The notes below the pieces were generated by a model. That model did not search any database. It had not been told where the DNA came from and worked only from the letters and a program-made list of their open reading frames with translations. A stretch of 64,000 bases of DNA from Octopus sinensis (taxonomy: Eukaryota): the NCBI RefSeq assembly GCF_006345805.1, contig NC_043011.1, positions 23,882,464-23,946,463 on the forward strand, given 5' to 3'. This document shows positions 9,370 to 58,205 of the stretch, in pieces (position 1 is the first letter of the stretch; every line of letters starts with the position of its first letter). Both the position numbers and the translations under genes were made by a program.

Positions 9370-9605
9370 CTATGAATTCTCGGCAGCATTATAGGTTCTG
9401 TAAGTTGGGTTTCCTGGCTGGAATATTGGTTGTTCTTCATCAGCTGTGTCAGCGGTGACGTTGTTATGCACAGACGTGGAACTCACTTGTCTTGCTTGGG
9501 GACGGAGTTTACGTGTGCGTGCCAATTCGATGATGATTGCCAGCAAAAGCAGTAAAAGACCAGCTTCGACAATAACAATTATCCAAACTGGACTGAGCGA
9601 AGTTT
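9370..9605 (-). CDS. TYR: Tyrosinase-family gene, terminal coding exon 5 (TM helix and cytosolic tail)
   Basis: Acceptor T13-gcag|AA ACT is phase 1, matching exon 4. Encodes (K)TSLSPVWIIVIVEAGLLLLLLAIIIELARTRKLR...DEEQPIFQPGNPTYRTYNAAENS-stop: a hydrophobic helix, a basic stop-transfer patch and a dileucine-like motif. Total CDS is 1608 nt = 535 aa + stop. Confidence 0.88.
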
Positions 9606-9777
9606 CTGCAAAAAAAAAAAAGAGAAGTTTAAAATAAAGAAAACACATTCCTTATTTTACCTCAGTTCATTTTTACTCTTTTATTTGTTTCAGTCATTTG
9701 ACTGCGGCCATGCTGGAGTACCCGCCTTTAGTCGAGAAAATCGACCCCCAGGACTTATTCTTTGGAAGCCTAGTACT

Positions 9778-9858
<81 letters not shown>

Positions 9859-10059
9859 ACTATTGAAAAGGTTGCAAGACGCATCGAAAATTTTAGGAAA
9901 ATAAAAATAAGGAATAAGTGCAAATTTTACCGGTGAGTGTGTTAAATTATAAGGCACAAAAAGAAAATGACTCTCCTTAGACACAACAGAATATGCTTCA
10001 ACACACGAACTTACATAAAGAATCTTGCAAACCAAATCCCAAAACGAAATATATATATA

Positions 10060-11328
10060 TAGGGTGCATGTATATATGCAAAAATGAAAATAACACTGAC
10101 ATCTCATTTTAACAGATATATTTACCCAAATTGCATGAAAATAACTTCAAATATTAAATAGTAAATTTATTCAATAAAATCGCCATTGGTTTCAACCACG
10201 GCCTCCAGACGACTTCGGAATCTTCCGCAACTCTTCTGGACGGTCTCCTTGTTTAAGTTGGTGAATGTTGCCATAATCCTTGCCTTCAGTTAATCTTTGG
10301 TGTTACAAGGAGTTTTGTTGGTTTCTCGTTCAACTGCCTCCTACACATAATAATCAAAGGGGTTGCAGTGTGGAGAGTTAGGTGGCCAGATGTTAGTGGT
10401 GATGTTGTCACAGAAATTGGCTGACAGCATGGCTGGGTTCTCCTGCTTGTGTGGCATGGTGGAGAATCCTGTTGCTAGACATAGTGTCAACTGACAGCGA
10501 CCCTCTTGACGCAGCGCAGCACTATCACCTTCAGGCACTTGATGTAGGCATCCGTGTTGAGTTTGAGGCCGTGTGTGAAGATAAATGGAAGCATAACGTC
10601 GCCATCACTAGTGATCACCCCAGACACCATGATATTGACTGGATGTTTGATTTTTATTACTCTCAGTGCGTGTTTTGGGGACACGGCAAGCCAACGGTTG
10701 GTCTGTGTGTTCAGCATCAGATCCTGGCAGAAATTTTTCTCGTCTGAGAAAAACCAAAACGTGTTCGGTTGGAAGGGATGCTTGAGTTTGTTCAAAAGCT
10801 TCGTAGTGCGGTCTTTCCTCTTGTCCTCGATAGCCTGGGATAAAAATTGGCCCTTTCTCATCTTCCATGGGGAATGCCGAATGTCTTCAAGTACTACCTA
10901 CCTGATAAGAAACTCAGACATTCCCATGTCTCTGGTGATGGACCTGATTGACTTGGAGGGATCGTTGTCAATCATAGCCAGCATTTCACCAAAAAATTCA
11001 GGAGTTCTTTTCTTATCAGAACGATCAGAGCAAGATTTCCGACCTGTCGCACCTTCATAATCACCATTAGACTCATCCAACATTTTCTAAATCTTCTGCA
11101 CTGTCCTCATATTGACACACAAACACTCTGAAATGTTCGTATTGGAGCATCAGGTGCGAATGCTAAACAGTACAGCATGTCGTTTCGAAATTTCTGGCAG
11201 AGTGAATTGTGTCATGGTGCTGTTTTTCTTATAGAAAGTGCCCAACTAACCCTATCGTACTGCTTAATTGACAAAATCAAAAATAAACTATGTGCATAAA
11301 ATGGTGACAATTTACCCATTGCATTCTG
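10060..11328 (-). mobile_element. DD37D (maT/Bmmar1-like) Tc1-mariner element, degraded, in intron 4
   Basis: Minus-strand fragments WFFSDEKNF, IMVSGVITSDG and NIWPPNSPHCNPFDYYV. The right TIR-like end is ...gacaatttacccattgcattctg|TA. Length about 1.27 kb. Confidence 0.85.
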
Positions 11329-11329
<1 letters not shown>

Positions 11330-11360
<31 letters not shown>

Positions 11361-11655
11361 TGTATGTATGTATGTATGTATGTATGTATGTATGAGTGTG
11401 TGTATGTATGTATGTATGTGGTATGTATGTATGTATGTATGTATGTATGTATGTGTATGTATGTATGAGTGTGTGTATGTATGTATGTATGTATGTATGT
11501 ATGTATGTATGTATGTATGTATGTGTGTATGTATGTATGTGTGTATGTATGTATGTATGTACGTACGTACGCATGTATGTATGTATGTATGTATGTATGT
11601 ATGTATGTATGTATGTATGTATGTATGCATGTATGTATGTATGTATGTATGTATT
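11330..11655 (+). repeat. (TATG)n microsatellite
   Basis: Direct reading. It is the source of the MYVC/HTYI pseudo-ORFs. Similar tracts at 281-400, 2099-2290, 42636-42700, 43380-43460 and 43910-44040. Confidence 0.95.
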
Positions 11656-11709
11656 TGCTTCTGGAGAGTAGAAAGAATCCGTTGTAACTGAGAGGTGTCA
11701 ACCTATCAA

Positions 11710-11898
11710 CCGAATAGTTGGAGTAGCAGCAGTGATTGCTTGGATCGGATTCTTTTATCTTTTTTCTCGTTTCAGTCATCAGACAGTAGCCAAGCTGGGA
11801 CAACGCCTTGAAGAATTTTAGTCGAACGAATCGACTCCAGTACTTAATTTTTTCAAAGCCTAGTCAAGCGGTGCTGTGACACAAATACAGACACAGAG

Positions 11899-11954
<56 letters not shown>

Positions 11955-12125
11955 ACACACATACACACACATGCATGTGTGTGTGTGTATACGATGGGCC
12001 TTCTTTCAGTTTTAGTCTACCAAATCCACCCACAAGGGTTTGATCAGCCCAAGGTTATTGTAGAACGGGACTGAACTCAGAACCATGTGATTGGGAAACA
12101 AACTTCTTACGACACAGCCATGTTT
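11710..12125 (-). mobile_element. SINE-B (with internal TA/GT/CT microsatellite linker)
   Basis: Reverse complement of the family seen at 13165-13545 (...GACGGAAACTGAAAGAAGCCCGTCG(TA)n...GACTGAAAC tail). Confidence 0.7.
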
Positions 12126-13164
12126 GAGGGTTTTTCAAATTCTTAATTTAACGATCTATATTTCTAGTTCCTTTCCACCAGAAACGAAGGCGTGTGGTTT
12201 TAAGAACAGAGTAGTTAGGATGTTGTGACATTAATGCCTTTCCCAATGTATTTAACGATGTATTTGAGAAAGAAAATAGCTACAACTGGGGACTGAAAGT
12301 GGTTCGCAGATTCGGTTCGCTGCTACCCAGCCTTGTACTCCATCGCATTCGCCACGTTGTATTAAGTAGTAAAAGTACATCCATGTCTATACTAACCAAC
12401 GAGCCAACCAACCAACCAACCAACCAACCAACTGCTTAGATTCTGTAGGATAGTAATAGTGATTCCTAGTACATATTAGTCATATGACACGATCACATCA
12501 GTTATAAATATACCCTTAGTTTATAGTGATACTCCCATCCTCAAATTTCTTCAAACAATCATTTGTAACTGTTCCATCATGTGACAACCTTCAAAAGTAA
12601 TGGCTACTTTTAATTTTCAATTTTCCTTAATATCGTCTGGCTATTTGTTTTTTGCAAGAAGCCTTTTCTGTTATATAATGGAGCACACAAGAGAAAAATA
12701 TTTATGAAGCTCATCAACAGATGGTGCAGATAATTCTTTTTATCATATTGTTATCTCGCTAATTATATATCAGGAAGGTGACATACTTAGTAGCGTTTTC
12801 ATTAAAAGAAAAAAAAAAAAAATTAGCCGCAGGGATAATAACATTCTTGTCAGTCGAGATTTATTAAACTCCAACTAAATCCCCTTCTTCAAATTTGACC
12901 TCAATATTGTATTAGGGATATGTGTAGCGAGAACTATTTTCATAAAAATGAATACTAGCGATGAATAGTAAGTAACCACACACATTAGATAAGGTGAATT
13001 AATAGAAACTTATTCAGATATTGTCTTTCTATTTCGTGTAATATTCAATACAAGTTAAAGACCAAACTCTAAACTAAATGGAAACTTTTGTGACTTATTC
13101 TGTCCTCCTTCAAAAGCAATCGTAATTCTGTACAAATAGAATTACATTTACAACGTATCAAAAT

Positions 13165-13545
13165 ATAGGCGCAGGCATGGCTGTGGGGTAAGAAGCATGG
13201 TTTTAGGTTCAGTCCCACTGCGTGGCACCTTGGGCAAATGTCTTCTACTATAGTTTCGTGTCGAAACTATAGTACTTAAGATGGTAGACGGAAACTGAAA
13301 GAAGCCTGTCGTATATGTATATGTATGTGTGTGTGTGTGCATCTTTGTATATGTGTTTGTCCCCCACCACCACTTGACATCCGGTGTTGGTGTATTTACG
13401 TCCCCTCAGCTTAGCGGTTCAGCAAAAGACACCGATAGAATAAGTACCAGGCTTAAAAAAGTTCTGGGATTGATTCTTTCGGTCAAAAATTCTTCAAGGT
13501 GATGCTCCAGAATGGCTGCAGTTTAATGGTTGAAACAAGTATAAG
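13165..13545 (+). mobile_element. SINE-B copy
   Basis: GCAGGCATGGCTGTGGGGTAAGAAG...GGTTCAGTCCCACTGCG (A/B-box-like head), conserved body. Other copies at about 29750-30135, 30585-31050, 25300-25600(-), 40255-40425(-), 59965-60160(-), 61510-61655(-) and 63645-63800(-). Confidence 0.8.
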
Positions 13546-14167
13546 ATAAGATATATAAAATTTTAGTTTAGATTAGCCATTATATTTTACTTGATTCAGT
13601 CATTGGACAATAGCCATGCTGGGGCACCGCCTTGAAGTGTTTAATGGAACAGATGAACCTCTATCTCTTATTATAAAAGGCAGATTTTATCTGCCTCCCT
13701 TTGGGAGTTATACAAATCTACAATATAGGATTTCTTCAATTACAATTTACCTAGCATTTTTAAGAGTACAATGCATCGCGTCATGCCAGGTCCAGTTTTT
13801 AAAATTTAAACTCCAATTAAGCAAAATTTACAGAAAACTCACATTCTGGTGTGTGTGTCAAATGCTTTTCTTAGTCTGGTTTACACCACACGCAAACGCA
13901 CACACACAGTGGGCAACGAATAAAATGAAAGTAAATAGCGACAGAGTAATAAAATGAAAGTAAATAGCGACTGAAAGTATTCTGTCTATGACGCTGATAG
14001 ATACATGAGTAAAATGTATGGGAAGCTAAGAGCTAAGAGTGAGTGAAAATGTTCTTGGAAGAGAGTAAATAGCGAGAGAGAGAGTGATTTGAGGAAGACT
14101 TTACATTAAATAACCGTAGTGGCTTGTGTTAGTAATAAAGTAAACATACACTCATACATACATACAT

Positions 14168-14198
<31 letters not shown>

Positions 14199-14423
14199 TA
14201 CACACACACACATACATACACACACACATACATACATACACACATACTTACATACATACATATACATACATACATATACATACATACATACACACACACA
14301 CATACACACACACACAGTATTGAAGCTTGAGAACAATCAGATACATTTGCAACACATCTGTTGAAAATATTATTGTTCACACACATACATATACATATAT
14401 ACATACAGACAGACAGACAGATA

Positions 14424-14454
<31 letters not shown>

Positions 14455-14457
<3 letters not shown>

Positions 14458-14875
14458 ATCCAGCATGGCCACAACCTCAAGGCTGAAACATATAAAAGAA
14501 TAACAGAATATAAATGTGTGCAAAGTACAAGAAATATTAATGCAGTATATGGGGATTGGACAATAAGCGTAAGGCAGCGTCAATGGTGGTTCCAGAAATC
14601 CCGAGCCATAAACTACAGCCTAGAAGACGAGCCTCATCCTGAAAGATCTGTAGAACTCGACAAGGACATCCTGAAAACCCTGGTGGAACAAAATCTCATC
14701 GTAACTGTTGAGGAACTAGCAGAGAAGCTTGGATTTGGTCATTCAACCATTCATTGAGACCTGTGTGCTATCGGAAAAGTCAGCAAATTGGGTCAATGGG
14801 TTCCTCACGAACTTTCCGAGTCTAATTGCATGCAGAGAGTGAATGTATGCTTTTCTTTGCTGTCACATCTCACCA
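14455..14875 (+). mobile_element. mariner (DD34D/SETMAR-like) transposase N-terminal fragment
   Basis: Reads INAVYGD..QWWFQKSR...LEDEPH..R..ELAEKLG..HSTIH, then GQWVPHEL (the mariner WVPHEL motif). Truncated at about 14880. Confidence 0.8.
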
Positions 14876-14892
14876 CTACTGCGCTATGTATA

Positions 14893-15528
14893 TCTATATA
14901 TATAAAACTGTAGTTGTGTGAGTGTCTGTCCCTTCGATTTAGATTCCTAACTACTCCCACATTTTGCGGTGCAGTTTAACCAAATTCGGGTAGCTTATAG
15001 TCGTGATTCATATCGAGCCCGTCTGAGTATTAGCGCGCGTCTACGATGAGTCTACGATTTTAAAAATAATTTAACATCATTTTTTATTCCATTTTAATGC
15101 ATAATTTTTCGTGTGTCGATGGCGGCGGAGTTGGCGTCCAAGCTCACACCTGCACCTGTGGGGAAGGGAGTGTAAGGAAATCAACGTCGTAATGCGTTGT
15201 CAAGGAGACCAGCGTTCTTTTTGAACAACGACTTCATGGCTTGAAGACACCAAAACAGAAATGGCTAAGAAAGTGTCTACATGAGTCTACGATTTAAAAA
15301 AAAATTTACCATCGTTTTTTTTCCATTTTAATGCATTTTTTCGCTATTATATAAGGTAAGTAACTCTCTAAAAATGTCTACGATGAGTCAACGATTAAAA
15401 AAAAAATTTACCATCATATTTTTTTCATTTTTAATGCATTTTTTGCTATTTTTTGGCTATAACTCTCTAAAAATGCTTATATAGTTATTTCCCTTACAAA
15501 CCCGAGCAACGCCGGGCGATACTGCTAG
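14893..15528 (+). mobile_element. Non-autonomous Helitron
   Basis: A|TCTATATATATAAAACTG...CCCGAGCAACGCCGGGCGATACTGCTAG|T: 5' TC, 3' subterminal CCCG..CGGG hairpin, CTAG end, inserted between A and T. Three internal subrepeats of about 65 bp. Confidence 0.8.
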
Positions 15529-16702
15529 TCACTTAATATTCTTTAAAATCCGGTGCTTATTCAATCGGTCACTTTTTGATGAACCGCTTGGTAATGGGGA
15601 CGAAAATAAACCAATACCGATTGTTAAGCTGTTGGGGACTAGATACAAACGAGATCACACACACACACACACACACAGACACAGACACACACACAGACAC
15701 ACACAACACACACACACACACACACACGCACGCACGCATGCACGCACGCACGCACACATACAACAAGCTTCTACACATTTTCAGTTTATCAAGGCATTGG
15801 TCGGCCCGGGACAATAGTGGAAGGCTTTTGCCCAAGGCACTTCGCAGTGGGATGATCCTGAAACCAGGTTGTTGTAAGGCGTGCTTCTTAACCACACAGT
15901 CCTGCTTGTACATTGTATAAAAATATTTCTGTTCGAGAAAACACAAAGTTAAATTTTGACAAGGTGGGTTTAGAGCAGGTTGTCCTATTATATTACTGTC
16001 CTATTATATTACTGGTATTTACTGAAATGCGCTGCAAAGAAAAACGAGACCCGGTAGCGTTTGCACTTAGAACTGGCGAATTTAAATACAAGTCATCTAG
16101 TTTTGTGTGCTACTGCTCTTGTTTTCAGCTCTAATACTAATGACTTAGTAATTTCTTTTTACTCCTTCATATATAGTAACCCCAACAGTGTGGAGGCGCA
16201 ATGGCCCATTGGTTAGGGCAGCGGTCGTAAGAACGCGGTTTCGATTCCCAGACCGGGCATTGTGAGTGTTTAGTGAGCAAAAACACCTAAGCTCCACGAT
16301 GCTCCGGCGTGGGGAGCGATGAACCTCGCTGTACTCTTTCACCACAACTTTCTCTCACTCTTTGTTCCTACTTCTGCCACGAAGCACAGGAACCATGGTG
16401 TAACCCACTATAGTGTGGTAAAACTTTCAGAGTAAAACAATGGACTAACTCTGTTACCTCTTTTTGTTTTAACGGTAAATATTCGAATTTATTTATGGAT
16501 AGTAAAATAGTGTTTTGCTTTCGTATACTCAGCCTGTAAATAGAAGTTCTATTCTGCTCTTTTTTTTTTATGTGACAGCAAAACTAGGTATTCATCACAT
16601 TTATTATAAAGTTAGCTAATTCAGACAAGCCAGAGAACAGGGTAAAATGCCACAGAGATGGCATTTTTACCTCTGTTCACATGGCATTAGTCGGTCCAGG
16701 AT

Positions 16703-16930
16703 GGCGAGCTGGCAGAAACGTTAGCACGCCCGCCGAAATGCGTAGCCGTATTTCTTCTGCCGCTACGTTCTGAGTTCAAATCCCGCCGAGGTTGACATTG
16801 CCTTTCATCCTTTCGGGGTCGATAAATTAAGTACCAGTTACCCACTGGGGTCGATATAATCGACTTAATCCGTTTTTCTGTCCTTGTAAGTCATCTCTGT
16901 GTTTAGCCCCTTGTGGGTAGTAAAGAAATA
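16703..16930 (+). mobile_element. SINE-A copy (A2-type tail)
   Basis: GGCGAGCTGGCAGAAACGTTAGC...GAGTTCAAATCCC...ending TGTGTTTAGCCCCTTGTGGGTAGTAAAGAAATA. Confidence 0.85.
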
Positions 16931-17139
16931 TATATTGTAGAAGAGGCTCTTGCCCAGTAGCACTAAACCCAAAACCAAGTGGTTGCGAAACGAACTTCTT
17001 TACCACACAGCCACGTCTGCGCCTATCATAAATTTAAAAAGAAATATTTAATGATTAACAAAACTATAATAAGGGTTTTCGTCTGATTTATACCGTGTGT
17101 CAACTCCTTATCATCTGTAAAAATAGCATTACAAATACC

Positions 17140-17361
17140 AGTTTCAAATTTTGGCACAAGGCCAGCAAGTTTAAGGCAGGAGATAAGTTGATTACATCGA
17201 CCTCCCCCGCCCAGTACTCAACTGGTACTTATTTTATCGACACCGAAAGGATGAAAGGCAAAGTCGACCTCGGTGGAATTTGAACTCAGAACGTTGCGGC
17301 AGACAAAATGCCGCTTAGCATTTTGTCCAGCATGCTCATGATTCTGCCACCTCACCGCTTT
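17140..17361 (-). mobile_element. SINE-A copy, inverted relative to 16703-16930
   Basis: Same core in the opposite orientation, 90 nt into intron 4. Confidence 0.8.
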
Positions 17362-17451
17362 AATAACAATATTTGTATCATTACGATTTACGGAATTGGA
17401 AAAGAAATGTTTGAGGTTTAAAACAATATTGAAATCCTGAATGTTACTTAC

Positions 17452-17596
17452 TCGGTATATCTGCTTCAACCAAATCGTCATAGTCGTAGCCAAGAGCGTG
17501 TGAGTGAGCAAACATCATGAAGTTCTTTTCTACTGGAAAGAACGGCACCATGTTGGCCATTCTACCGTGACCCGGCGGGGCTTCAAATACTGGCAG
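17452..17596 (-). CDS. TYR: Tyrosinase-family gene, coding exon 4
   Basis: Acceptor cttctttgacag|CTG, donor CCG A|gtaagt, phase 1. The 145 nt encode LPVFEAPPGHGRMANMVPFFPVEKNFMMFAHSHALGYDYDDLVEADIP, matching the TYR-family APIGHN..MVPF.P...LGYDY block. Confidence 0.93.
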
Positions 17597-18113
17597 CTGT
17601 CAAAGAAGAGAAATAGTTACATAAAATTTTAAAACTTATATAGAAACTTTAATATTATGTGGTGAATATTTTGTTTACGGCGGTGTTGATGATGGCTACA
17701 GAAGTATAAAATGTTTATGGTTAAAAGAAAAACCCAAACACAAACATGCAAAAGACCCTCTCCCCACCAAAAACAAAAACAAACTACATCTGGTAAATGT
17801 TTAGGAAATTTCTTTAAATAATAATCTTAGTTTTTATCCTGTTGCCCTATAATAGAAAAACATACAAAGTGTGTGTATTAAAAATGTGTGTATTAAAACG
17901 GCTCTGTATTAAAACTGTAAAAAGGCTGACTGTTTTTCACACAGATATGCGTACGTGGTTACATACGTGAATAGATAAAAGTTGGCACTGTATGTAACAA
18001 ATACACTGAATAACTTATGGAATTCTCATTACTTCGTTGTGCTGAATACAAATGCTCGCACGATTGTAGTTTCAAGATGCCTGGCCTGCACTAGATATGA
18101 TGTATTACATCAA

Positions 18114-22072: not shown

Positions 22073-22103
<31 letters not shown>

Positions 22104-27995: not shown

Positions 27996-27999
27996 AGTG

Positions 28000-47909: not shown

Positions 47910-47949
<40 letters not shown>

Positions 47950-47951
<2 letters not shown>

Positions 47952-50290: not shown

Positions 50291-50614
50291 ATATATACCT
50301 ACGTCTGTTATTTAATATAGAATTTTGAGGATTTTATATACGAATGAGAGATATATATTCCTACATGTTGTCGCTTAAAGTTTTCCTTTAACATAATGTA
50401 TATCTAAGATTGTATATTCTGATCTAATATTTGATGTAAATCTGATCGCTAAGCAGAATAATATAAACAATTTTAATAGGTCTTTATTTCTATCTTTGCG
50501 TATGTAGCCGATACTTTTTCCAGGAATTTACATTCGCGCGTGCGCGCACACACAAGTCGTATTTCTATCAATAATGAATTAGTAGTAAAAACAACGCCGC
50601 TGCTACAGCAACAA

Positions 50615-50619
50615 CTGTA

Positions 50620-50673
<54 letters not shown>

Positions 50674-50675
50674 AT

Positions 50676-50713
<38 letters not shown>

Positions 50714-50775
50714 TCAGTAGTAGCAGTAGTAGCAGCAGCAGTAGCAGTAGTAGCAGTAGTAGTAGTAGTAGTAGT

Positions 50776-50852
<77 letters not shown>

Positions 50853-50890
50853 CAGCAGCAGCTGCGGCGGCGGTGGTGGTGATGGTGGTT
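50615..50890 (+). repeat. Compound triplet microsatellite (ATT)n(AGT)n(AGC)n
   Basis: Direct reading. Confidence 0.95.
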
Positions 50891-51622
50891 TTAGGATGAT
50901 GAAAAAGGAGAGGCACAAAAGATGGTGACGGTTGTGTGGATATGTGAAATATATTCGCAAAAGTTTTCAACATAAGTCAATGAATGTATAAAAGTACATA
51001 AAAGCAACTTCTTTCTGTCTTTCTTTTCTTTTGTCTTGTGAACAAAACAAGATGGATTTATAATCGTAATTAAAAGGATTTATAATATATCTTTAGGGTG
51101 GCCCAAGCCATGTTTTAAAAGGCTATTTGAATCGTTATATTTTTTTCTCTTTTAAGGAGCTAACAAGATTTCCGATCAAGCAGACAAGTATAAACTCAGC
51201 AGCTGTTGACTGCGATCAAAAATATCCTTTTAAAACATAGCAGAATGAAAAACAAATGGAACAAATGGCTTGTTTGTCAACCTAATCTGGCCCCAGTATT
51301 TAGTCTTCCTTATTTATACAACTGGTAATCAGATTAGAAGTCATTGAAAATGCTTCAGGGTCCACAGTAAGTCTTCGCTGCTACATAGGCTCTGGTAGTT
51401 TCAAAGGTGTAAGAGTTTAACTGCAGTTTAGGTAGCTGTTGCTGTTGTCAACCGTGATAAAAGTCATATGGTCAAAGGCATTCCATTTGTGACCATCTCA
51501 TCTACTATAATATCAGGGATTACATTGTTCAATGTATGCATTATTTAAGACGATACGGTGTGATTTGTGGGTGATTTGGTGATTTGGCAGCGATTTCAAG
51601 GAGGTCGAGCAACTACTTAGAG

Positions 51623-52240
51623 CTAGTTTCCCAACGTAGGGTATCTGCATTTCCTGGTAGTGCGAGAAAGCATTTCGAGGTTCGACAAAAGAAGTATATA
51701 TTTTATTTTAATCAACTTTTAGAATAAATCTCTTGCAAATGACTTTTTCAACCAAGCGCACCAAGGACGTTGTTATTCTACTCATGTAGCTTTAACCCTT
51801 AACAGATTATAACTAACAACAGTGTTTTCATTCCATTTGCAACAACACACTTATGCGAGTTTGGATTCAGTTCTTTTGTCAATCAAGACAAATTGCCTGA
51901 ATTCACGAGCAAACATACACATTTCAATCAGAAAGAAAATGTTACATTTTGATAAAGTTACGAATGAGTAGGAAGTCTTTGAATTTTATTTTCACAATTG
52001 CGATTGATTTCACAGTGTATAATTCACTGTATCTAATTGCTCAATTTATATTCGCATTTTGCAAATTTATTTTTAAAGTTCAATTTGTTCGTCCACAATA
52101 CTATATGTAGTTCAATTCATAAAAAAAATTTAGTCACTAAAAAAATTGGCTTTTAAATCTTTATATGTGATATCACTTTTGCAGGTGATACGAAAATAAA
52201 TGAAACATTTGTGAGGCATAGAAAAGGTTAGGGAGCATTG
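51623..52240 (+). mobile_element. Non-autonomous hAT (Buster/Charlie-like) element
   Basis: Degenerate TIRs CTAGTTTCCCAAC and GTTAGGGAGCATTG, with an 8-bp TSD ACTTAGAG/ATTTAGAG. Internal FIPFATTHLCEFGFSSFV matches the hAT C-terminal dimerisation motif. Confidence 0.65.
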
Positions 52241-53449
52241 ATTTAGAGCCCCCCCCCCTTGTTATTGTTGTTGTTTTATCTCCAATTCAGCCCTGATTAA
52301 ACAGACGGGTTGATCAAGAGAGTTACAGCCTCTCTTTATTATATGCCAAACACAGACTACTTTGAAGGAGTAGTTTCATCCAGAGAACTGTTGGGAATGA
52401 AGGTGTTTAGAAAGGTATTTTCCTATAATTTCTTCAAAAGAAAATGTAACCATCTTCGCATAAATTACATCACCTTGGTTAGTTTATCCCATTCTTCGTT
52501 ACATAAGACTCATGGGAATACCGGACTGTTACCCAGCGGTTCTGAAGAATATTTTAGCGTGGAATTTTTATATGATTTTACGAAAATTCAGAAACCAATA
52601 CCTATATTTTACAGACAACCCCACCACCTTCATCTTAATACAACATTAAATATAATAAAAATTGCTTTAAAGATGTAATTTATTCGTAAAAATAAATGAA
52701 TATAACTTTGTTTTTGTAAATGAATAACATTCGTTTTATAAAATAAGTTTTTGTTAAATTTCATTAAATAACTTTGTATCTTGTGGAAGACTAGGATCTG
52801 TTTTCACGGAATCCTGAGATACCTCGAAACCTCTTTAGAGGAACACAACGATAAACTAAGCACCAGGAGGTTATGCAGTCACTCGACCTACTAAAATGGC
52901 TGTGAAATCTGTCTGAAAAAGATCACACACCCTACTATTGATAAAAAATGGAAGGTCACATTAAATATTGCAGACGTATACACTTTATAAGAATTGGGTG
53001 GTCATGGTTAGATTGTCTTTGATCATAAGTCTACGTGATTAGAATCGAACTGGGGCTAAACGACAATAAGTTATACCATAAGTTATACAACGGTAAGATA
53101 TTCAATAAAGTTATGCAAACTTTTTATACAACAGTAAGCTACACAGCTTAGAGTTATACCAGCGATTTTCAATGAGTTCCTTTAGGTAAAAGAAAACACA
53201 AGTGGATCAGCTAATTATGATTTTATTCAACGTGGTGTTCCAGTATGGCCGCAGTCAAATGACTGAAACAAAAGAATAAAAGAATATAAACCTCTCAGAT
53301 TGATACACTTATTACAGCGGCCCTACAGTTTTTCTAAGCCCTGTAAAATAACCCGGAAGGTTGGGCCTCCAACTAGGCCTTTCGTGATACTTTTGAAGCC
53401 AGGAATTTTCACTACTCCCTCATTGAATACACATATATGTAAGTAAAGA

Positions 53450-53506
<57 letters not shown>

Positions 53507-53562
53507 TACGTACGTATTTATGTATGTATATATGTATATGTATGTATGTATGCATGTATATA

Positions 53563-54865
53563 CAGTGTACAGTGAATAAATTGTCATCTAACAATGAAGT
53601 TAACACTGACATCTCATTTTAACAGATATATTAACCAAAATTACATAAAAATATCTGCAAATACTAGAGAGTAAATGTATTCAATAAAATTGCCATTGGC
53701 TTCAACCACGGCCTCCAGACGATTTCGGAATCTCTTGCAACACTTCTGGACAGTCTCCTTGTTTAAGTTGGTGAATACTGCCATAATCCTTGCCTTAAAT
53801 TCATGTATTACAAGGAGTTTTATTGATCTCTCACTCAACTGCACACCACACATAATAATCAAGTGGGTTGCAGTATGGAGGAGGTTGGTGGCCAGATATT
53901 AGGGGTGATGTGGTCGCAGAAATTGTCTGACAGTATGACTGGGTTTTCCTGCTTGTGTAGCATGGTCCAGAGTTCTGTTGCCAGACATAGGGTGTTCCAG
54001 TAGCCACCCTCTTGACTCAGAGCAGCACTAATCTCCTCCAGGCACTTGATGTAGGCCTCCGTGTTGAGTCTGAGGCCATGTGGGAGGATGAATGGAGGCA
54101 TAACGCCGCCATCACTAGTGTTCTCTCCAAACACCCTGATGTTGACTGGATGTTTGGTTTTTATCACTCTCGGTACATGTTTTGGGGATACGGCAAGCCA
54201 ACGATTGTTCTTGTTTTCAGCATCTGATCTTGGCAGAAGTTTTTCTCGTCTGAGAAAAAAACCAAAGCATGTTCGGTTGGAGGGGATGCATGAGTTTGTT
54301 CAAAGGCTTCGTAGTGGGGTCTTTCCTCTTGTCCTTGGGATAAAAATTAGACGGCTTGGAATAAAAATGGCCTCTTTCTCATCTTGCATGAGGAATACCG
54401 AATGTCTTCATGCAACACCTGCCTGATAAGAAACTCAGACACTCCCATGTCCTTGGCAATGGACCTGATTGACTTGAAGGGATCGTTGTCAATCATGACC
54501 TGGATCTCATCAAAAAATTCAGGTGTTCTTTTCTTATCAAATGATTAGAGGGAGTTTTCCGAGCTGCCGTACCATCATAATCATCATTAGACTCGTCCAA
54601 CTCTTTCAGAACCCGCTGAACTGTCCTCATATTGACACCCAAACATTCTGAAATGTTCGTATTGGAGCATCCGGCGCGAATGCTAAACAGTACAGCATGT
54701 CGTTTCGAAATTTCTGGCAGAGTGAATTGTGTCATGGTGCTGTTTTTCTCACAGACGGTGCTCAACCGACCCTACCATACTGTGTTGTCGACAAAATTAA
54801 AACCAAAAAATGTGCATGCACGAAATAAAAAATATAAAATGACGACAATTTATCTATCGCATCCT
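53563..54865 (-). mobile_element. Second DD37D element of the same family, in intron 1
   Basis: Colinear with 10060-11328 over its whole length. Imperfect TIRs of about 28 bp (CAGTGTACAGTGAATAAATTGTCATC vs TAGGATGCGATAGATAAATTGTCGTC) with TA flanks. Confidence 0.85.
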
Positions 54866-55028
54866 ATGTATGTATGTATGTATGTATGTATATATATATA
54901 TACTCGTATATATATATATATATACAGTATATATATATATAATATATATATATATATAATATATATATATATATATGATATATATATATATATATATAGA
55001 TATATGTATATATATATATATATACTCG

Positions 55029-55080
<52 letters not shown>

Positions 55081-55233
55081 GACAGACAGACGTGGCAGAA
55101 GTAAATAGACACCCTTATAATACACATAGCGGCATGATCTTAAAATATCGACAAGATCTTAATATCTTACTGCAGAAATCAAACCAAGGAGTGATAATGC
55201 AAAGCACAGAGAAATGATACTGAAAAAGGTATT

Positions 55234-55301
<68 letters not shown>

Positions 55302-55410
55302 CTATCTATCTATCTATCTATCTGTCTATCTATCTATCTGTCCGTCTGTCTGTCTGTCCGTCTGTCTGCCTGTCCGTCCGTATGTCTGTCTGACCGTCTA
55401 GCTGTCTGTG

Positions 55411-55481
<71 letters not shown>

Positions 55482-55546
55482 ACAAATAAATAAATATATA
55501 CATACATACATACATACATACATACATACATACATACATACATAGA

Positions 55547-55578
<32 letters not shown>

Positions 55579-55580
55579 AG
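54866..55580 (+). repeat. Compound (TA)n/(GA)n/(TATC)n/(TACA)n microsatellite block
   Basis: Direct reading. Other (TATC)n at 24602-24686 and (ACCT)n at 34760-34890. Confidence 0.9.
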
Positions 55581-56564
55581 AGGGACATATGTATGTAATA
55601 TAATTTTTCTGAATCTTCAGATTTTTTCAATATGCTTGGCCACTGGTTTAAATTGATATTAATCAAATTAATATTCAATTTTTACCCTTATTATTTAAAT
55701 ATATATATATATAGTCTACTACTAATATAGGATGAAGTTTTTTTCTCTACAGAAAAAAATTCCATCAAGAAATGTCGCAGCATATTAAAATACCTTTACG
55801 GTTAAAATTATAAACAACTTCCACATATAATTTATATAAATTATATGTGGAAATTGACGATTTAATAGTCTGTTATCAGCATATTGGCTTTGAAATAATT
55901 TTCTTTAGCCCTTACTTATAAGTTGTTTATATATATATATATATGTAGGAAGGCACTAAGATACGATAATGGCATTGCAGATAATGTGAATTAGGTTAAA
56001 TACAGAAATTATAATTTCAAACTTGGACGCAAAGCACACATTTTGGCGGAAGAGTACACACAATTACACTGACACCAGAACAAGACGGCTTTTAGTTATG
56101 TCAATCCCGAAAAGAAGAAAGACCCAAACAGGCTTCGTAGATTTGAAGTCAGAACTTACAGAGACATAACTAAAAGCTGCACAAACATTTAAATCAGAGT
56201 CGTTACTCGTCTTTACCGTCCGCAGTATATCAGTATAAAAGAAATATGATTTCAGCTGCGCGAAAGCTAACGACATCATGGTTCTAATTAGCTTAAATTA
56301 AAAGGACAAAAAAGGAAAATCAAAGTTGGTATTAAATAAAAGAAAAAAAAAAAAAATTGTTATTGATATATTTTTCGATTCTTTCATATGAGGAAATCGT
56401 GAAGAGTTTAAGTTCAATAAATGGAAAAGTTCAATCGACATGAATAATGAAATCTTGCACACCCGCCTTTTTTTACCCCCAAAACAAGCACGAAGGATGT
56501 ACATGGCGTCATCAACAACAACAACATTTTTAATAATAAAAGTATTAATACTGAAGATTTATAT

Positions 56565-56656
<92 letters not shown>

Positions 56657-56925
56657 TTTGGCTCAAGGTCAGCAATTTTGAGGAAAGCGTGGTGCTGGGA
56701 AGTCGATTACATCGACCCAAGTACTTGACTGGTACTTTACTTTATCGATCGCGAAAGGATATAAGGCAAAGTTTATTTCGGTCAGATTTGAATTTCAAAC
56801 GCAAAGAACCTGGAAAAAATGCCATTAAGCATTTTGTCCAACAGCAATTTGTCTCTTTAACAACAACAACAACAACAACAACAGCAGCTGTAGTAACAAC
56901 AACAACTATTATTATTATCATCATA

Positions 56926-57325
56926 AGGAGGCGAGCTGGCAGAATCGTTAGCACGCAGGGCGAAATGCTTAGCAGTATTTCGTCTGCCGCTACGTCCTGA
57001 GTTCAAATTCCGCCGAGGTCGACTTTGCCTTTCATCCTTTCGGGGTCGATTAAATAAGTACCAGTTACGCACTGGGGTCGATGTAATCGACTTAATCCGT
57101 TTTCTGCCCTTGTTTGTCCTCTCTGTGTTTAGCCCCTTGTGGGTAGTAAAGAAATAGGTATTTCGTCTGTCGCTACGTTCTGTGTTCAAATTCTGCTGAG
57201 TTCAACTTTGCCTTTCATCCATTCGGAGTCGATTAAATAAAGTACCAGTTATGCACTGGGGTCGATGTAATCGACTTAATCTCTTCCCTCAAATTTCAGG
57301 CCTTATGCCTACAGTAGAAAGGATT
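56926..57325 (+). mobile_element. Dimeric SINE-A, head-to-head with an inverted copy at about 56662-56855
   Basis: Full head at 56926, A2 linker, second partial monomer and an (ATC/ATT)n tail. Confidence 0.8.
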
Positions 57326-57386
57326 ATCATCATCATCATCATCATCACCACCACCACCATCACCACCACCATCATTATCATTATTA

Positions 57387-57428
<42 letters not shown>

Positions 57429-58075
57429 TATTATTATTATTATTATTATTATTATCGCCTTCATCAATATCGTCTTGCCAAATTTAGAAAACTTTGAAGT
57501 TTGGATGAGGGATAACTAGCGAAGCTGTATCAAAATTTAAAAAAACTTATCTAAATTTACTTAAACTAACATGGTTCACGGAAAAATTGACACATATTTC
57601 AAATGTTTTGTTTATCCGTTATTAACGAACTGTTTAAGACTATCAGTGTTGCTATAAATGCAACCAGATCTATAAGTCCTATTGATTTATTTTGACGAGA
57701 CACAAGGCCATCATTTGTAGAGGGTGAATTATACGCAAATACTGAATTTCTTACAGTCCATCGGTCCCGCTACCATATTCGTACTTACCTTATTGACCCA
57801 AGAAGAATGTAATAATTGAAGATAATAATGAAATTTGAACTAGAAGGGGAGAAAGAGACGGAAGTAGATACTGTGACGCACATTGCTACCCATATAAAAA
57901 GAAATAGCTTAGCAAAATGCGAGGTCGATGACTGTTTTTGTTAAATGATAGATAAGTTGAGGTTTTTTTTGTGTGCCAGAATAGGGGAAACATTTCCTAA
58001 GAAACATAAAAACAAAGATGCCTGAAAGAAAGTTTATACCAGAAAGAGAAAACGGAAAATAAAAGGGGGTTTTAC

Positions 58076-58205
58076 CTGGCCTTGTTGGACAACAAATTCC
58101 ATCAGGAGTGGTGGCATTTTTCGCACATACTCTTGGAAACTGTGCAGAAATTGAGGGCAATAATGTGAAGAAAAGAAAACATGAAAATGTTTGAGGAATA
58201 TCCAT
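58076..58205 (-). CDS. TYR: Tyrosinase-family gene, coding exon 1 (signal peptide and start of Cys-rich domain)
   Basis: Reads MDIPQTFSCFLFFTLLPSISA|QFPRVCAKNATTPDGICCPTRP+G. The hydrophobic leader is followed by AQFPRxC...CCP, as in vertebrate TYRP1/DCT N-termini. Donor CCAG|gtaaaa, phase 1. An in-frame upstream ATG at 58223 is an alternative start. TYR is a family-level symbol; orthology to TYR vs TYRP1/DCT is not established. Confidence 0.9.

What the first reader, a model, noticed from the sequence alone, without database searches (positions are those of the whole stretch)
9370..58205. Hidden complete vertebrate-type (membrane-bound, EGF-Cys-rich) tyrosinase in a probable cephalopod genome
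Seen: five exons over 48.8 kb (introns 19998, 16980, 2404 and 7846 nt) splice in frame to 535 aa. Domain order is signal peptide, EGF-like Cys domain, CuA, Cys linker, CuB, TM and short tail, the same layout and about the same length as vertebrate TYR/TYRP1/DCT. Established: most described molluscan tyrosinases (shell, byssus) are of the secreted type without this EGF+TM architecture, and cephalopod chromatophore pigments are largely attributed to ommochromes while ink is eumelanin. Inference: this is a candidate melanosome-type enzyme for ink-gland, eye or skin melanogenesis.
Basis: partly seen in the sequence, partly recalled or inferred. Interest (0 to 1): 0.75.

Follow-up and report, generated by a model that had tools for sequence, protein, structure and literature searches.

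The report
Octopus membrane-bound tyrosinase gene, already annotated
The five-exon gene is real and encodes a membrane-anchored tyrosinase built like the vertebrate pigment enzymes, but it is the already annotated "tyrosinase-like" gene of Octopus sinensis, an old animal gene that cephalopods kept, and its role in ink melanin is still only inferred.

Summary
Five minus-strand exons with GT-AG introns of 19998, 16980, 2404 and 7846 nt splice in frame. The conserved start codon lies 18 nt further upstream (58223), which gives 541 aa rather than 535.

The gene is not hidden. The window is 100% identical to Octopus sinensis CM016873.1, and the product is 541/541 identical to RefSeq XP_029645898.2 "tyrosinase-like". 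Orthologues are annotated in O. vulgaris, O. bimaculoides, Argonauta and Sepia.

The protein is a gamma-subclass type-3 copper protein. It has a signal peptide, a 10-Cys EGF-like region, CuA and CuB with all six His, a transmembrane helix and a cytosolic tail. Its best solved-structure match is human TYRP1.

It is not an orthologue of vertebrate TYR. It groups with nemertean, flatworm, annelid and priapulid genes. All four of its intron positions and phases are shared with nemertean and schistosomatid genes, not with frog TYR.

Three additions:
- The cytosolic tail carries a conserved EEQPIF motif aligned with vertebrate QPLL.
- Two MITF/TFE-type E-boxes upstream are conserved across four cephalopods.
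- Sepia esculenta larval mRNA carries the intron-less orthologous ORF.

The melanosomal, ink-gland function is plausible but untested.

The parts
58076..58223 (-). Coding exon 1 (148 nt, aa 1-49, ends in phase 1). It holds the start codon at 58223-58221, the signal peptide (aa 1-27, 58223-58143) and the first Cys of the Cys-rich region.
38078..58075 (-). Intron 1 (19998 nt, GT-AG, phase 1), filled with microsatellites and decayed transposon copies.
   Evidence: The same position and phase occur in Argonauta, Tubulanus and Trichobilharzia.
37116..38077 (-). Coding exon 2 (962 nt, aa 50-370). It holds the rest of the Cys-rich region, including the EGF-like core C96-C119 (37940-37869), CuA His185/211/220 (37673-37566), Cys254/257/286/293/296, Glu352, and CuB His368 with Asn369.
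20136..37115 (-). Intron 2 (16980 nt, GT-AG, phase 0). It splits CuB between HNQ and VH.
20001..20135 (-). Coding exon 3 (135 nt, aa 371-415). It holds CuB His372 (20132-20130), gate residue Leu382 and His394-His395 (ligand His395 at 20063-20061). The exon is 135 nt in Octopus, Argonauta, Tubulanus and Trichobilharzia alike.
17597..20000 (-). Intron 3 (2404 nt, GT-AG, phase 0).
17452..17596 (-). Coding exon 4 (145 nt, aa 416-463). It encodes the C-terminal part of the lumenal domain (PGHGRMANMVPFFP ... LGYDYDD).
9606..17451 (-). Intron 4 (7846 nt, GT-AG, phase 1), just before the transmembrane segment.
9370..9605 (-). Coding exon 5 (233 nt plus stop codon 9372-9370; aa 464-541). It holds the transmembrane helix (aa 469-494, 9591-9514) and the cytosolic tail (aa 495-541). 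The tail carries DEEQPIF (aa 519-525, 9441-9421) and NPTY (aa 529-532, 9411-9400).
58591..58600 (-). GTCATGTGCT, a flanked E-box about 370 nt upstream of the ATG. It is conserved in O. bimaculoides, Argonauta hians and at the 5' end of the Sepia esculenta mRNA contig. A candidate MITF/TFE site; binding was not tested.
58478..58485 (.). TCACGTGA, a palindromic flanked E-box about 260 nt upstream of the ATG. It is the only copy in the 64-kb window and is conserved in the same three other cephalopods, in the same order relative to the first box.

Best explanation
This is the single-copy gamma-subclass (membrane-bound) tyrosinase gene of Octopus sinensis, already annotated as "tyrosinase-like" (XP_029645898.2).

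Shown: it encodes a type I membrane glycoprotein. The parts are a cleavable signal peptide, a lumenal 10-Cys EGF-like subdomain packed against a four-helix binuclear metal domain with all six His ligands, one transmembrane helix, and a 47-aa cytosolic tail.

Inferred mechanism:
1. The protein is made in the ER, loaded with copper and N-glycosylated in the secretory pathway.
2. It is sorted by its acidic di-hydrophobic tail motif (EEQPIF) from the trans-Golgi network or endosomes into a lysosome-related pigment organelle.
3. There, with its catalytic domain facing the lumen, it oxidises L-tyrosine and L-DOPA to dopaquinone, the first step of eumelanin synthesis.

The most likely site is the melanosome of ink-gland cells. 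Transcription may be driven through two conserved MITF/TFE-type E-boxes upstream of the coding sequence.

Evolution: the gene is a vertically inherited spiralian copy of the ancestral metazoan membrane tyrosinase. It is a pro-orthologue of the whole vertebrate TYR/TYRP1/DCT family, not of TYR itself. Cephalopods kept it, and it has not been reported from other molluscs.
For: Identity and reality:
- The protein is 541/541 identical to RefSeq, and the window is 100% identical to the O. sinensis chromosome.
- The exon structure is identical in O. bimaculoides and Argonauta.
- Sepia esculenta whole-larva RNA-seq assemblies carry the intron-less 543-aa orthologous ORF. It is listed in 93 blocks of the Logan collection (10 distinct runs among the places shown), and two of the runs are named in S. 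esculenta papers.
- dN/dS against Argonauta is about 0.03.

Family:
- Pfam Tyrosinase, E=7.6e-36.
- Human TYRP1 matches at E=5.8e-76 over the whole ectodomain, including the Cys-rich part.
- The AlphaFold2 model has pLDDT 82. Its best Foldseek match is TYRP1 5m8l (E=7e-35, TM 0.85 on the target). Squid hemocyanin units reach only E about 3e-8.
- Each hemocyanin copper site matches at only 8-20 bits.
- The relatives I labelled among the best 150 of 1.84 billion representatives are membrane-type proteins of a nemertean, flatworms, a priapulid, an annelid, sponges and deuterostomes.

Tyrosinase-like rather than TYRP/DCT-like:
- The motif is LHHAF, against LLHTF or VLHSF in TYRP1 and DCT.
- Phe follows the conserved Glu (LEGF).
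- The gate residue is aliphatic, Leu382.
- Asn369 and Glu352 are kept.

Sorting: DEEQPIF aligns with fish TYR ERQPLL, a TYRP1-like EPLL and nemertean DETPLV. It is almost invariant from octopus to cuttlefish. The [DE]XXXL[LI] consensus for AP-complex sorting is stated in PMC2173715.

Regulation: GTCATGTGCT and TCACGTGA lie 114 nt apart upstream of the ATG. They occur in the same order in O. bimaculoides, Argonauta and S. esculenta, while the surrounding sequence has diverged. Flanked E-boxes occur at only 0.2 per kb across the window.

Cell biology: Palumbo's model, as reviewed by Derby, has ink-gland tyrosinase delivered on trans-Golgi vesicles that fuse with premelanosomes and present their catalytic sites to the matrix. 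That fits a membrane enzyme.

Evolution: all four introns share alignment column and phase with Tubulanus and Trichobilharzia, not with frog TYR. The cephalopod clade has bootstrap 100 and lies inside a protostome gamma group.
Against: - No expression data for any octopus tissue, and no enzymatic data, were available here.
- The only cephalopod ink tyrosinase cloned so far, from Illex argentinus (Naraoka 2003, cited), is as I recall a soluble, hemocyanin-like alpha-type enzyme. So ink melanin may not need this gene.
- The best-studied protostome orthologues, the schistosome tyrosinases, act as I recall in eggshell tanning, not in pigment.
- The tail motif ends in I-F, not the canonical L-[LI].
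- The two E-boxes lie inside the assembled S. esculenta transcript, so they may be 5'UTR sequence rather than promoter. USF and Myc/Max also bind CACGTG.
- The near-universal Asn of the ANDP motif is replaced by Phe or Tyr in all cephalopods. The effect of this is unknown.
- Sequence cannot decide between copper and zinc.
- Deep nodes of the NJ tree are unsupported (bootstrap below 25).
- No alpha-type molluscan tyrosinase could be fetched to include in the tree.
Confidence: 0.6

Rival explanations
1. The same gene and protein, but its job is quinone tanning (sclerotisation) of a secreted structure rather than melanin synthesis. Candidate structures are the egg chorion or stalk, the beak, the radula or the sucker lining. 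The enzyme would sit in the membrane of secretory granules and oxidise Tyr or DOPA residues of structural proteins, as reported for flatworm orthologues in eggshell formation.
For: Flatworm genes are among the closest labelled relatives outside cephalopods, along with a nemertean and a priapulid. They include Trichobilharzia, Heterobilharzia, Fasciola, Macrostomum and Theama. The octopus gene shares all four intron positions with Trichobilharzia. From my own knowledge, schistosome tyrosinases are needed for eggshell cross-linking (Fitzpatrick et al. 2007). S. esculenta expression is known only from whole larvae, which says nothing about tissue.
Against: Cephalopods have many secreted alpha-type tyrosinases that are better suited to extracellular tanning; Argonauta argo has eight of nine. 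The conserved tail motif and the MITF/TFE-type boxes point to an intracellular organelle programme. Coleoids make large amounts of eumelanin in melanosomes.
Confidence: 0.2
2. The protein is a TYRP/DCT-like accessory enzyme, not a true tyrosinase. It could be the dopachrome-rearranging enzyme of the ink gland, or a zinc-containing stabiliser of another tyrosinase. A soluble alpha-type enzyme would then do the tyrosine oxidation.
For: The best solved-structure match is TYRP1, a zinc protein without tyrosinase activity. A melanosome-associated dopachrome-rearranging enzyme exists in Sepia ink gland, and no sequence for it is mentioned in the passages of the review that I read. The cloned ink tyrosinase is of another class (plus my memory of that paper). 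The cephalopod-specific Asn-to-Phe/Tyr change near CuB could alter activity.
Against: The residues that distinguish vertebrate TYR from TYRP1 and DCT are TYR-like here: LHHAF, LEGF and an aliphatic gate residue. The TYRP/DCT specialisations arose inside chordates, after the split from this lineage. TYRP1 ranks first only because no TYR structure appeared among the matches.
Confidence: 0.12
3. One reading: a previously unrecognised (hidden) orthologue of vertebrate tyrosinase in a mollusc.
For: The architecture and length match vertebrate TYR. Two papers state or imply that molluscs have only alpha-type tyrosinases.
Against: The identical protein is in RefSeq, UniProt holds the orthologues, and the gene is called in the assembly. 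The tree and the intron positions place it with spiralian gamma genes, outside the chordate TYR/TYRP clade.
Confidence: 0.03
4. It is one of the ordinary secreted (alpha-subclass) molluscan tyrosinases, and the transmembrane segment and EGF-like region are artefacts of mis-splicing.
For: None was found beyond the shared Pfam domain.
Against: The junctions that attach the N-terminal Cys region and the transmembrane exon are conserved in three octopods, a nemertean and a schistosomatid, and are contiguous in cuttlefish mRNA. Alpha-type hemocyanin units match only at the copper sites, at 8-20 bits each. Their fold match is far weaker than that of TYRP1.
Confidence: 0.01

Closest known systems
Vertebrate tyrosinase family (TYR, TYRP1, DCT); solved structure human TYRP1, PDB 5M8L
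   Same: The architecture is the same: signal peptide, 10-Cys EGF-like subdomain, binuclear metal domain with six His, one transmembrane helix and a short cytosolic tail. The mature N-terminus is QFPR in both. Sequence identity is 32-38%. The fold match has TM 0.85. The tail has an acidic di-hydrophobic motif at the position of QPLL. A flanked E-box upstream resembles the M-box.
   Different: It is not orthologous to any one of the three paralogues, because it branches outside the chordate group. Intron positions differ, except possibly the last. The tail motif is I-F, not L-L. The gate residue is Leu, where TYR has Val and TYRP1 has Thr. The ANDP Asn is replaced by Phe. Metal content and activity are unknown.
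Spiralian and other protostome gamma-subclass tyrosinases, e.g. Tubulanus polymorphus XP_074654258.1, Trichobilharzia and other schistosomatid tyrosinases, Capitella ELT93343.1, Priapulus XP_014674551.1
   Same: These are the closest relatives outside cephalopods; Tubulanus is 42% identical at E=6e-106 over the full length, transmembrane helix and tail included. The nemertean has an identical five-exon plan, with all four introns in the same column and phase and a 135-nt exon 3. The flatworm shares the same four introns and has three more.
   Different: Octopus introns are about 47 times longer in total: 47.2 kb against 1.0 kb in Tubulanus. The flanked E-boxes were not found within 0.5-1 kb upstream of the nemertean or flatworm genes. 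The flatworm enzymes are known, from my memory, for eggshell tanning rather than melanin.
Alpha-subclass molluscan type-3 copper proteins: secreted shell, byssus and ink tyrosinases (e.g. Illex argentinus ink tyrosinase, Naraoka 2003) and hemocyanin functional units
   Same: They share the Pfam tyrosinase core and the CuA/CuB histidine motifs. They occur in the same animals, and at least one is present in ink.
   Different: The class definition gives them no cysteine-rich region and no transmembrane helix. For hemocyanin units, the only alpha-type sequences I could compare, similarity to the octopus protein is confined to the copper sites, at 8-20 bits each; no secreted alpha-type tyrosinase could be fetched. 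The fold match to squid hemocyanin is E about 3e-8 and TM 0.34, against 7e-35 and 0.85 for TYRP1.

Membership tests
Gamma-subclass (membrane-bound) type-3 copper proteins, as defined by Aguilera et al. 2013 | N-terminal signal peptide | tested here: met
   The hydrophobic stretch FSCFLFFTLLPSISA is followed by QFPRVC. Q28 aligns with residue 1 (QFPRQC) of the crystallised mature TYRP1 chain. No dedicated signal-peptide predictor was available.
Gamma-subclass (membrane-bound) type-3 copper proteins, as defined by Aguilera et al. 2013 | Cysteine-rich (EGF-like) region between the signal peptide and CuA | tested here: met
   There are ten Cys at 33, 44, 45, 55, 63, 96, 98, 107, 110 and 119, all invariant or nearly so across 16-37 family members. 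The core C-x-C-x-G-N-x(2)-G-x(2)-C-x(2)-C-x(2)-G-x(2)-G-x(2)-C is conserved from sponge to vertebrate.
Gamma-subclass (membrane-bound) type-3 copper proteins, as defined by Aguilera et al. 2013 | CuA H1(n)-H2(8)-H3 and CuB H1(3)-H2(n)-H3 histidine motifs | tested here: met
   CuA is His185, His211 and His220, with 8 residues between H2 and H3. CuB is His368, His372 and His395, with 3 residues between H1 and H2.
Gamma-subclass (membrane-bound) type-3 copper proteins, as defined by Aguilera et al. 2013 | Single C-terminal transmembrane domain | tested here: met
   The Kyte-Doolittle 19-residue mean peaks at 3.0 for aa 471-489. It is the only segment above 1.6 apart from the N-terminus. AlphaFold2 models helix 469-496. 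A transmembrane segment at the same place is seen in most full-length relatives.
Gamma-subclass (membrane-bound) type-3 copper proteins, as defined by Aguilera et al. 2013 | Aliphatic placeholder residue over the active site | tested here: met
   Leu382 lies at the position of TYR Val, 10 residues after CuB H2.
Gamma-subclass (membrane-bound) type-3 copper proteins, as defined by Aguilera et al. 2013 | Phylogenetic placement with gamma proteins rather than alpha or beta | tested here: met
   In the NJ tree, 110 gamma-like sequences are separated from hemocyanin units with bootstrap 100, and the cephalopod clade lies inside them. The named relatives are all gamma-type. Caveat: no alpha-type tyrosinases other than hemocyanin units, and no beta-type proteins, were in the tree.
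Vertebrate tyrosinase proper (TYR, EC 1.14.18.1) | Orthology to TYR to the exclusion of TYRP1 and DCT | tested here: not met
   Vertebrate TYR, the TYRP1-like sequences and DCT group with tunicate sequences. The cephalopod clade lies elsewhere, with protostome genes. Intron positions are not those of frog TYR.
Vertebrate tyrosinase proper (TYR, EC 1.14.18.1) | TYR-type rather than TYRP-type signature residues around CuA and CuB | tested here: met
   LHHAF, LEGF and HN are TYR-like. The CuA motif is F-G-S-W-H-R, which is neither TYR (FLPWHR) nor TYRP (FLTWHR).
Vertebrate tyrosinase proper (TYR, EC 1.14.18.1) | Two copper ions, and monophenolase plus diphenolase activity | not testable with these tools
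   This needs purified protein, metal analysis and L-tyrosine/L-DOPA assays.
Melanosomal or lysosome-related-organelle cargo sorted by an acidic dileucine signal | [DE]XXXL[LI] motif in the cytosolic tail | tested here: inconclusive
   The tail has E-E-Q-P-I-F. The acidic residue is four positions before a hydrophobic pair, but the pair is I-F, not L-L or L-I. The motif aligns with ERQPLL of fish TYR and is conserved in all cephalopods. The consensus comes from PMC2173715. Binding to AP-1 or AP-3 was not tested.
MITF/TFE target genes (M-box or CLEAR-type E-boxes) | Flanked E-box TCAYGTG near the promoter | tested here: met
   GTCATGTGCT lies at 58591-58600 and TCACGTGA at 58478-58485. Both are conserved in four cephalopods. 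Only the presence of the motifs is shown. The transcription start, factor binding and regulation were not testable.
Alpha-subclass secreted molluscan tyrosinases | Signal peptide plus tyrosinase core, with no EGF-like Cys region and no transmembrane domain | tested here: not met
   Both extra domains are present and are encoded by conserved exons. Similarity to alpha-type hemocyanin units is limited to the copper sites.

The most novel reading that the evidence does not exclude
Among molluscs, coleoid cephalopods alone may have kept the ancestral metazoan membrane tyrosinase. They may have kept it together with two other parts of the vertebrate melanocyte programme: MITF/TFE-type E-boxes upstream of the gene, and an AP-adaptor-type tail signal for delivery to a lysosome-related organelle. 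If so, the ink-gland melanosome and the vertebrate melanosome would be deeply homologous. They would share a regulator, an enzyme and an organelle module inherited from the bilaterian ancestor, rather than being convergent inventions.
Probability: 0.25. Interest if true: 0.65.

Novelty: already known. Interest (0 to 1): 0.35.

Why it matters
As a gene discovery it does not matter, because the gene is annotated and named.

Its value is as a lead for two corrections to the literature:
- Papers on tyrosinase evolution that I could read still say that molluscs have only secreted alpha-type enzymes (Aguilera 2013; an iScience paper of 2024). Cephalopods clearly carry a membrane-bound gamma-type gene. 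Its intron structure shows it was inherited vertically from the spiralian ancestor.
- The molecular identity of the enzyme that starts eumelanin synthesis inside ink-gland melanosomes is not settled. The only cloned ink tyrosinase is of the soluble class.

This gene is an obvious single-copy knockout target for making ink-free laboratory cephalopods. It would also test whether invertebrate and vertebrate melanosomes share a regulatory and trafficking module.

Tried and rejected
1. The two word-indexed searches with alignments were meant to find gamma-type genes in other molluscs. They returned only 23 and 33 proteins and no new molluscs. The index saturates or misses distant relatives, so absence from other molluscs is not shown. 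I could label only 20 of the 150 best exhaustive-search hits.

2. Ten literature searches found no functional, expression or knockout study of this gene class in cephalopods, and no paper citing its accessions. The library lacks most subscription journals.

3. The first tree attempt lost the hemocyanin outgroup to a gap filter and was redone. Deep nodes remain unresolved, so I make no claim about which protostome phylum is sister to the cephalopod clade.

4. A megablast of the window against the fetched locus seemed to show only repeat matches. That was an artefact of sorting bit scores written in scientific notation. Direct comparison gives 64000/64000 identity.

5. dN/dS against Argonauta rests on saturated dS (above 3), so I use it only qualitatively.

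6. Pfam scans of intronic ORFs found only transposon remnants. There is no second gene in the window.

7. I considered the shared five-exon count with vertebrate TYR as evidence of orthology. I rejected it after mapping intron positions.

8. I could not obtain any alpha-type molluscan tyrosinase sequence for the tree. Hemocyanin units stood in for the alpha subclass.

Full report
**1.
The gene lies on the minus strand. Five exons are joined by four GT-AG introns: 58205-58076, 38077-37116, 20135-20001, 17596-17452 and 9605-9370. The spliced ORF is 1608 nt, or 535 codons plus a stop.

One correction is needed. An in-frame ATG 18 nt upstream, at 58223, adds MHRYLA and gives 541 aa. Database models use this start. 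In Argonauta the second Met is a Trp (MRRYLCWNIP), so 58223 is the conserved start.

**2. Where the window comes from, and whether the gene is hidden.**
The 541-aa product is 541/541 identical to XP_029645898.2 "tyrosinase-like [Octopus sinensis]" and 540/541 identical to O. vulgaris CAI9736171.1. It is 95% identical to O. bimaculoides XP_014779110.1 "tyrosinase", 81-82% identical to Argonauta hians, and 67-69% identical to decapodiform sequences. One of these decapodiform clusters contains the Sepia pharaonis "TYR" fragment CAE1280736.1.

The encoding locus is GCA_006345805.1 CM016873.1. The whole window matches positions 23,882,464-23,946,463 of it without a single mismatch. So the gene is annotated, named and present in UniProt. 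It is not hidden. No other gene is called within 10 kb on either side. The remaining long ORFs in the window are transposon debris.

**3. Support for the splice junctions.**
I could not map O. sinensis reads. Three independent lines support the junctions instead.
- O. bimaculoides and Argonauta hians have the same five coding exons (148, 962, 135, 145 and 233 nt) with introns of different lengths.
- Contigs of about 4 kb assembled from RNA-seq runs carry the orthologous 543-aa ORF without introns. The ORF is listed in 93 blocks of the Logan collection, and ten distinct runs appear among the places shown. Two of the runs (SRR19578107, SRR25097173) are named in papers on whole Sepia esculenta larvae.
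- The protein alignment is gap-free across junctions 1 to 3. It has one single-residue indel in the variable linker next to junction 4.

**4. What the protein is.**
The best solved-structure relative is human TYRP1, at E=5.8e-76. The alignment runs from the first mature residue (QFPRVC against QFPRQC) to the end of the lumenal domain, so it includes the Cys-rich subdomain.

An AlphaFold2 model built from 37 relatives has mean pLDDT 82 and pTM 0.78. It shows low confidence at the N-terminus (residues 1-8 and 21-27), in the linker before the transmembrane helix and in the tail, and it models a helix at 469-496. Foldseek puts TYRP1 first (E=7e-35, TM 0.85 on the target). Bacterial tyrosinases follow at about 1e-17. 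Squid hemocyanin units come far behind, at about 3e-8.

Sequence features, in 541-aa numbering:
- a hydrophobic signal sequence;
- ten Cys in the N-terminal region, with the EGF-like core C96-C119;
- CuA His185/211/220;
- CuB His368/372/395;
- five further Cys between the copper sites;
- seven N-glycosylation sequons in the lumenal part;
- one transmembrane segment, about aa 469-494;
- a 47-aa tail.

This is the definition of the membrane-bound gamma subclass of Aguilera et al. 2013: signal peptide, Cys-rich region, CuA, CuB and a transmembrane domain, with an aliphatic placeholder residue.

**5. Tyrosinase or tyrosinase-related protein?**
At the positions that separate vertebrate TYR from TYRP1 and DCT, the octopus protein looks like TYR.
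- It has LHHAF, where TYRP1 has LLHTF and DCT has VLHSF.
- Phe follows the conserved Glu (LEGF).
- It keeps HN at the first CuB histidine.
- The gate residue ten positions after the second CuB histidine is aliphatic: Leu382, against Val in TYR and Thr in TYRP1.

These features are shared by most non-vertebrate family members, so they are probably the ancestral state. One oddity is specific to cephalopods. The Asn of the almost universal ANDP motif after CuB is replaced by Phe in octopods or Tyr in decapodiforms. I cannot say what this does. Sequence cannot decide between copper and zinc.

**6. Relatives and evolution.**
An exhaustive HMMER search of 1.84 billion representatives found 3021 relatives. 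After the cephalopod cluster, the best hit is the nemertean Tubulanus polymorphus XP_074654258.1. It is 42% identical at E=6e-106 and aligned over the full length, transmembrane helix and tail included.

Among the other top hits I looked up are a cestode, Priapulus, a fish TYR, a hemichordate and Fasciola. Further lookups identified Capitella, the polyclad Theama and two sponges. Macrostomum appeared in a later search. Nearly all full-length hits have the EGF-like motif near residue 90-100 and a C-terminal transmembrane segment.

In an NJ tree of 110 such sequences rooted on hemocyanin units, the cephalopods form a clade with bootstrap 100. This clade sits inside a poorly resolved protostome group. 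Vertebrate TYR, the TYRP1-like sequences and DCT group with tunicates elsewhere in the tree. So the octopus gene is a pro-orthologue of the whole vertebrate trio, not of TYR.

**7. Gene structure gives the clearest evolutionary signal.**
I reconstructed exact exon chains for six genes and mapped their introns onto one alignment.

| Gene | Intron column (phase) | Note |
|---|---|---|
| Octopus, Argonauta | 68 (1), 492 (0), 539 (0), 601 (1) | five exons |
| Tubulanus | 68 (1), 492 (0), 539 (0), 599 (1) | five exons; introns of only 166-317 nt |
| Trichobilharzia | 68 (1), 492 (0), 539 (0), 597 (1) | the same four, plus three more |
| Frog TYR | 338, 439, 521, 595 | exons 831/217/148/182/221 nt |
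| Amphioxus | different, except possibly the last | last intron is phase 1, before the transmembrane segment |

The shared number of five exons with vertebrate TYR is therefore a coincidence. The octopus gene is a vertically inherited spiralian gene whose introns have grown about 47-fold.

**8. Is it unusual for a mollusc?**
Aguilera 2013 lists gamma proteins in sponges, flatworms, annelids and deuterostomes, and lists molluscan tyrosinases only under alpha. A 2024 paper still states that Mollusca possess alpha-subclass secreted tyrosinases. The Argonauta argo genome preprint says eight of its nine tyrosinases are alpha-type. The legend of its supplementary tree labels alpha, beta and gamma subclasses, but the text does not say which class the ninth gene belongs to.

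None of the relatives I could name is a non-cephalopod mollusc.

**9. Cytosolic tail.**
The tail is strikingly conserved from octopus to cuttlefish: DEEQPIF[QK]PG[ND]P[TS]Y.TYNAAE. In the family alignment, EEQPIF lines up with ERQPLL of fish TYR, EPLL of a TYRP1-like protein, KIPLL of an unnamed relative and DETPLV of the nemertean. This is the place of the acidic dileucine signal [DE]XXXL[LI], which binds AP complexes (consensus as stated in PMC2173715). From my own knowledge, vertebrate TYR uses this signal to reach melanosomes. The cephalopod version ends in I-F, so I score membership as inconclusive. Octopods also have NPTY, while decapodiforms have DPSY.

**10. Upstream sequence.**
Two flanked E-boxes lie within 400 nt upstream of the ATG.
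- GTCATGTGCT is at 58591-58600 on the gene strand.
- The palindrome TCACGTGA is at 58478-58485. As I recall it, this is the core of the MITF/TFE "CLEAR" site.

TCACGTGA occurs nowhere else in the 64 kb. GTCATGTGCT occurs elsewhere only in two copies of a local repeat. Flanked E-boxes occur at 0.2 per kb in the window.

Both boxes, in the same order, are conserved in O. bimaculoides and Argonauta hians inside otherwise diverged and gapped sequence. Both are also present near the 5' end of the longest Sepia esculenta transcript contig, at -631 and -548. They were not found within the 0.5-1 kb scanned upstream of the nemertean, schistosomatid or amphioxus genes. Frog TYR has one at -93.

Caveats:
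- I noticed the extended M-box match only after searching for E-boxes.
- The transcription start is unknown.
- In cuttlefish the boxes lie within the assembled transcript, so they may be 5'UTR sequence.
- Other bHLH-Zip factors bind the same core.

**11. Function.**
The review of cephalopod ink describes eumelanin synthesis in ink-gland melanosomes. In its model, tyrosinase and a dopachrome-rearranging enzyme arrive on trans-Golgi vesicles that fuse with premelanosomes and expose their catalytic sites to the matrix. That behaviour fits a membrane-anchored enzyme such as this one.

Three points weigh against it.
- The only cloned ink tyrosinase (Illex argentinus, Naraoka 2003; reference seen) is, as I recall, a soluble hemocyanin-like alpha enzyme.
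- A single-cell study of Loligo found "tyrosinase" co-expressed with TDO in a chromatophore cluster, without saying which paralogue.
- The flatworm orthologues are known, from my memory, for eggshell tanning.

My best explanation is a lumen-facing copper tyrosinase of a lysosome-related pigment organelle, most likely the ink-gland melanosome. I put it at 0.6, of which the identity part is near certain and the function part is roughly even odds or a little better. The tanning role gets 0.2 and a TYRP/DCT-like role about 0.1.

**12. Constraint.**
dN/dS is 0.44 between O. sinensis and O. bimaculoides, from 29 scattered amino-acid differences at low divergence. It is about 0.03 against Argonauta, where dS is saturated. 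The gene is intact in every cephalopod seen, so it is not a pseudogene.

**13. Verdict.**
The species guess is right and the architectural comparison is right. The claims of "hidden" and of a specifically vertebrate type are not.

What is new here is modest and computational:
- intron-level evidence that the gene is an inherited spiralian gamma tyrosinase;
- a conserved dileucine-like tail motif;
- a pair of conserved MITF/TFE-type boxes.

Novelty is "already known". Interest is 0.35, mainly as a ready target for testing how cephalopod ink melanin is made and whether melanosomes are deeply homologous.

Noticed in passing
window 930-1776 (+) and 60357-61343 (+): Tc1/mariner-type transposase remnants broken by frameshifts lie on both sides of the gene. 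Pfam finds HTH_Tnp_Tc3_2 and DDE_3.
   Followed up: partly
window 10083-11517 (intron 4) and 53593-55050 (intron 1): Two copies of a 1.45-kb dispersed repeat, about 82% identical and in the same orientation. Each has a degenerate ORF of 136-146 aa with no Pfam match.
   Followed up: partly
window 4912-5806 / 6832-7719 and 5107-5611 / 5890-6396: Local duplications (86% and 94% identity) downstream of the gene. Each of two copies carries a GTCATGTGCT that has nothing to do with the promoter-side box.
   Followed up: no
window 49227-49709 (+), 26158-27231 (-), 43062-43238 (-), 39874-40167 (-): Retroelement debris inside the introns. There is a weak zf-RVT match (E=4e-4, below Pfam's cut-off), related ORF fragments, and a GIY-YIG-looking ORF without a Pfam hit.
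   Followed up: partly
window, many places, e.g. 206-410, 2025-2350, 4830-5050, 11215-11700, 43290-43730, 50570-50970: Very abundant microsatellites, (TATG)n/(CATA)n, (GT)n and (AAT)n, produce long spurious ORFs (MYVC..., NNNN..., TTTT...) in several frames.
   Followed up: no
window 20102-20088 (aa 385-389, AAFDP) in exon 3; the same column in P0002, P0003, P0004: All cephalopod orthologues replace the otherwise near-universal Asn of the ANDP motif after CuB with Phe (octopods) or Tyr (decapodiforms). The structural or catalytic consequence is unknown.
   Followed up: partly
whole CDS; loci L001, L018, L015: dN/dS is 0.44 between O. sinensis and O. bimaculoides, from 29 scattered substitutions. 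That is high for an enzyme, yet it is about 0.03 against Argonauta with saturated dS. It may be noise at low divergence or recent relaxation.
   Followed up: partly
loci L013 (Tubulanus), L015 (Argonauta), L018 (O. bimaculoides), L001 (O. sinensis): The same four introns total 1.0 kb in the nemertean, 12.5 kb in Argonauta, 38.5 kb in O. bimaculoides and 47.2 kb in O. sinensis. This is a clean single-gene illustration of intron expansion in octopus genomes.
   Followed up: yes
window 9411-9400 (aa 529-532): An NPTY (NPxY-type) motif lies in the cytosolic tail of octopods. Decapodiforms have DPSY at the same place, so only the P-x-Y is conserved.
   Followed up: no
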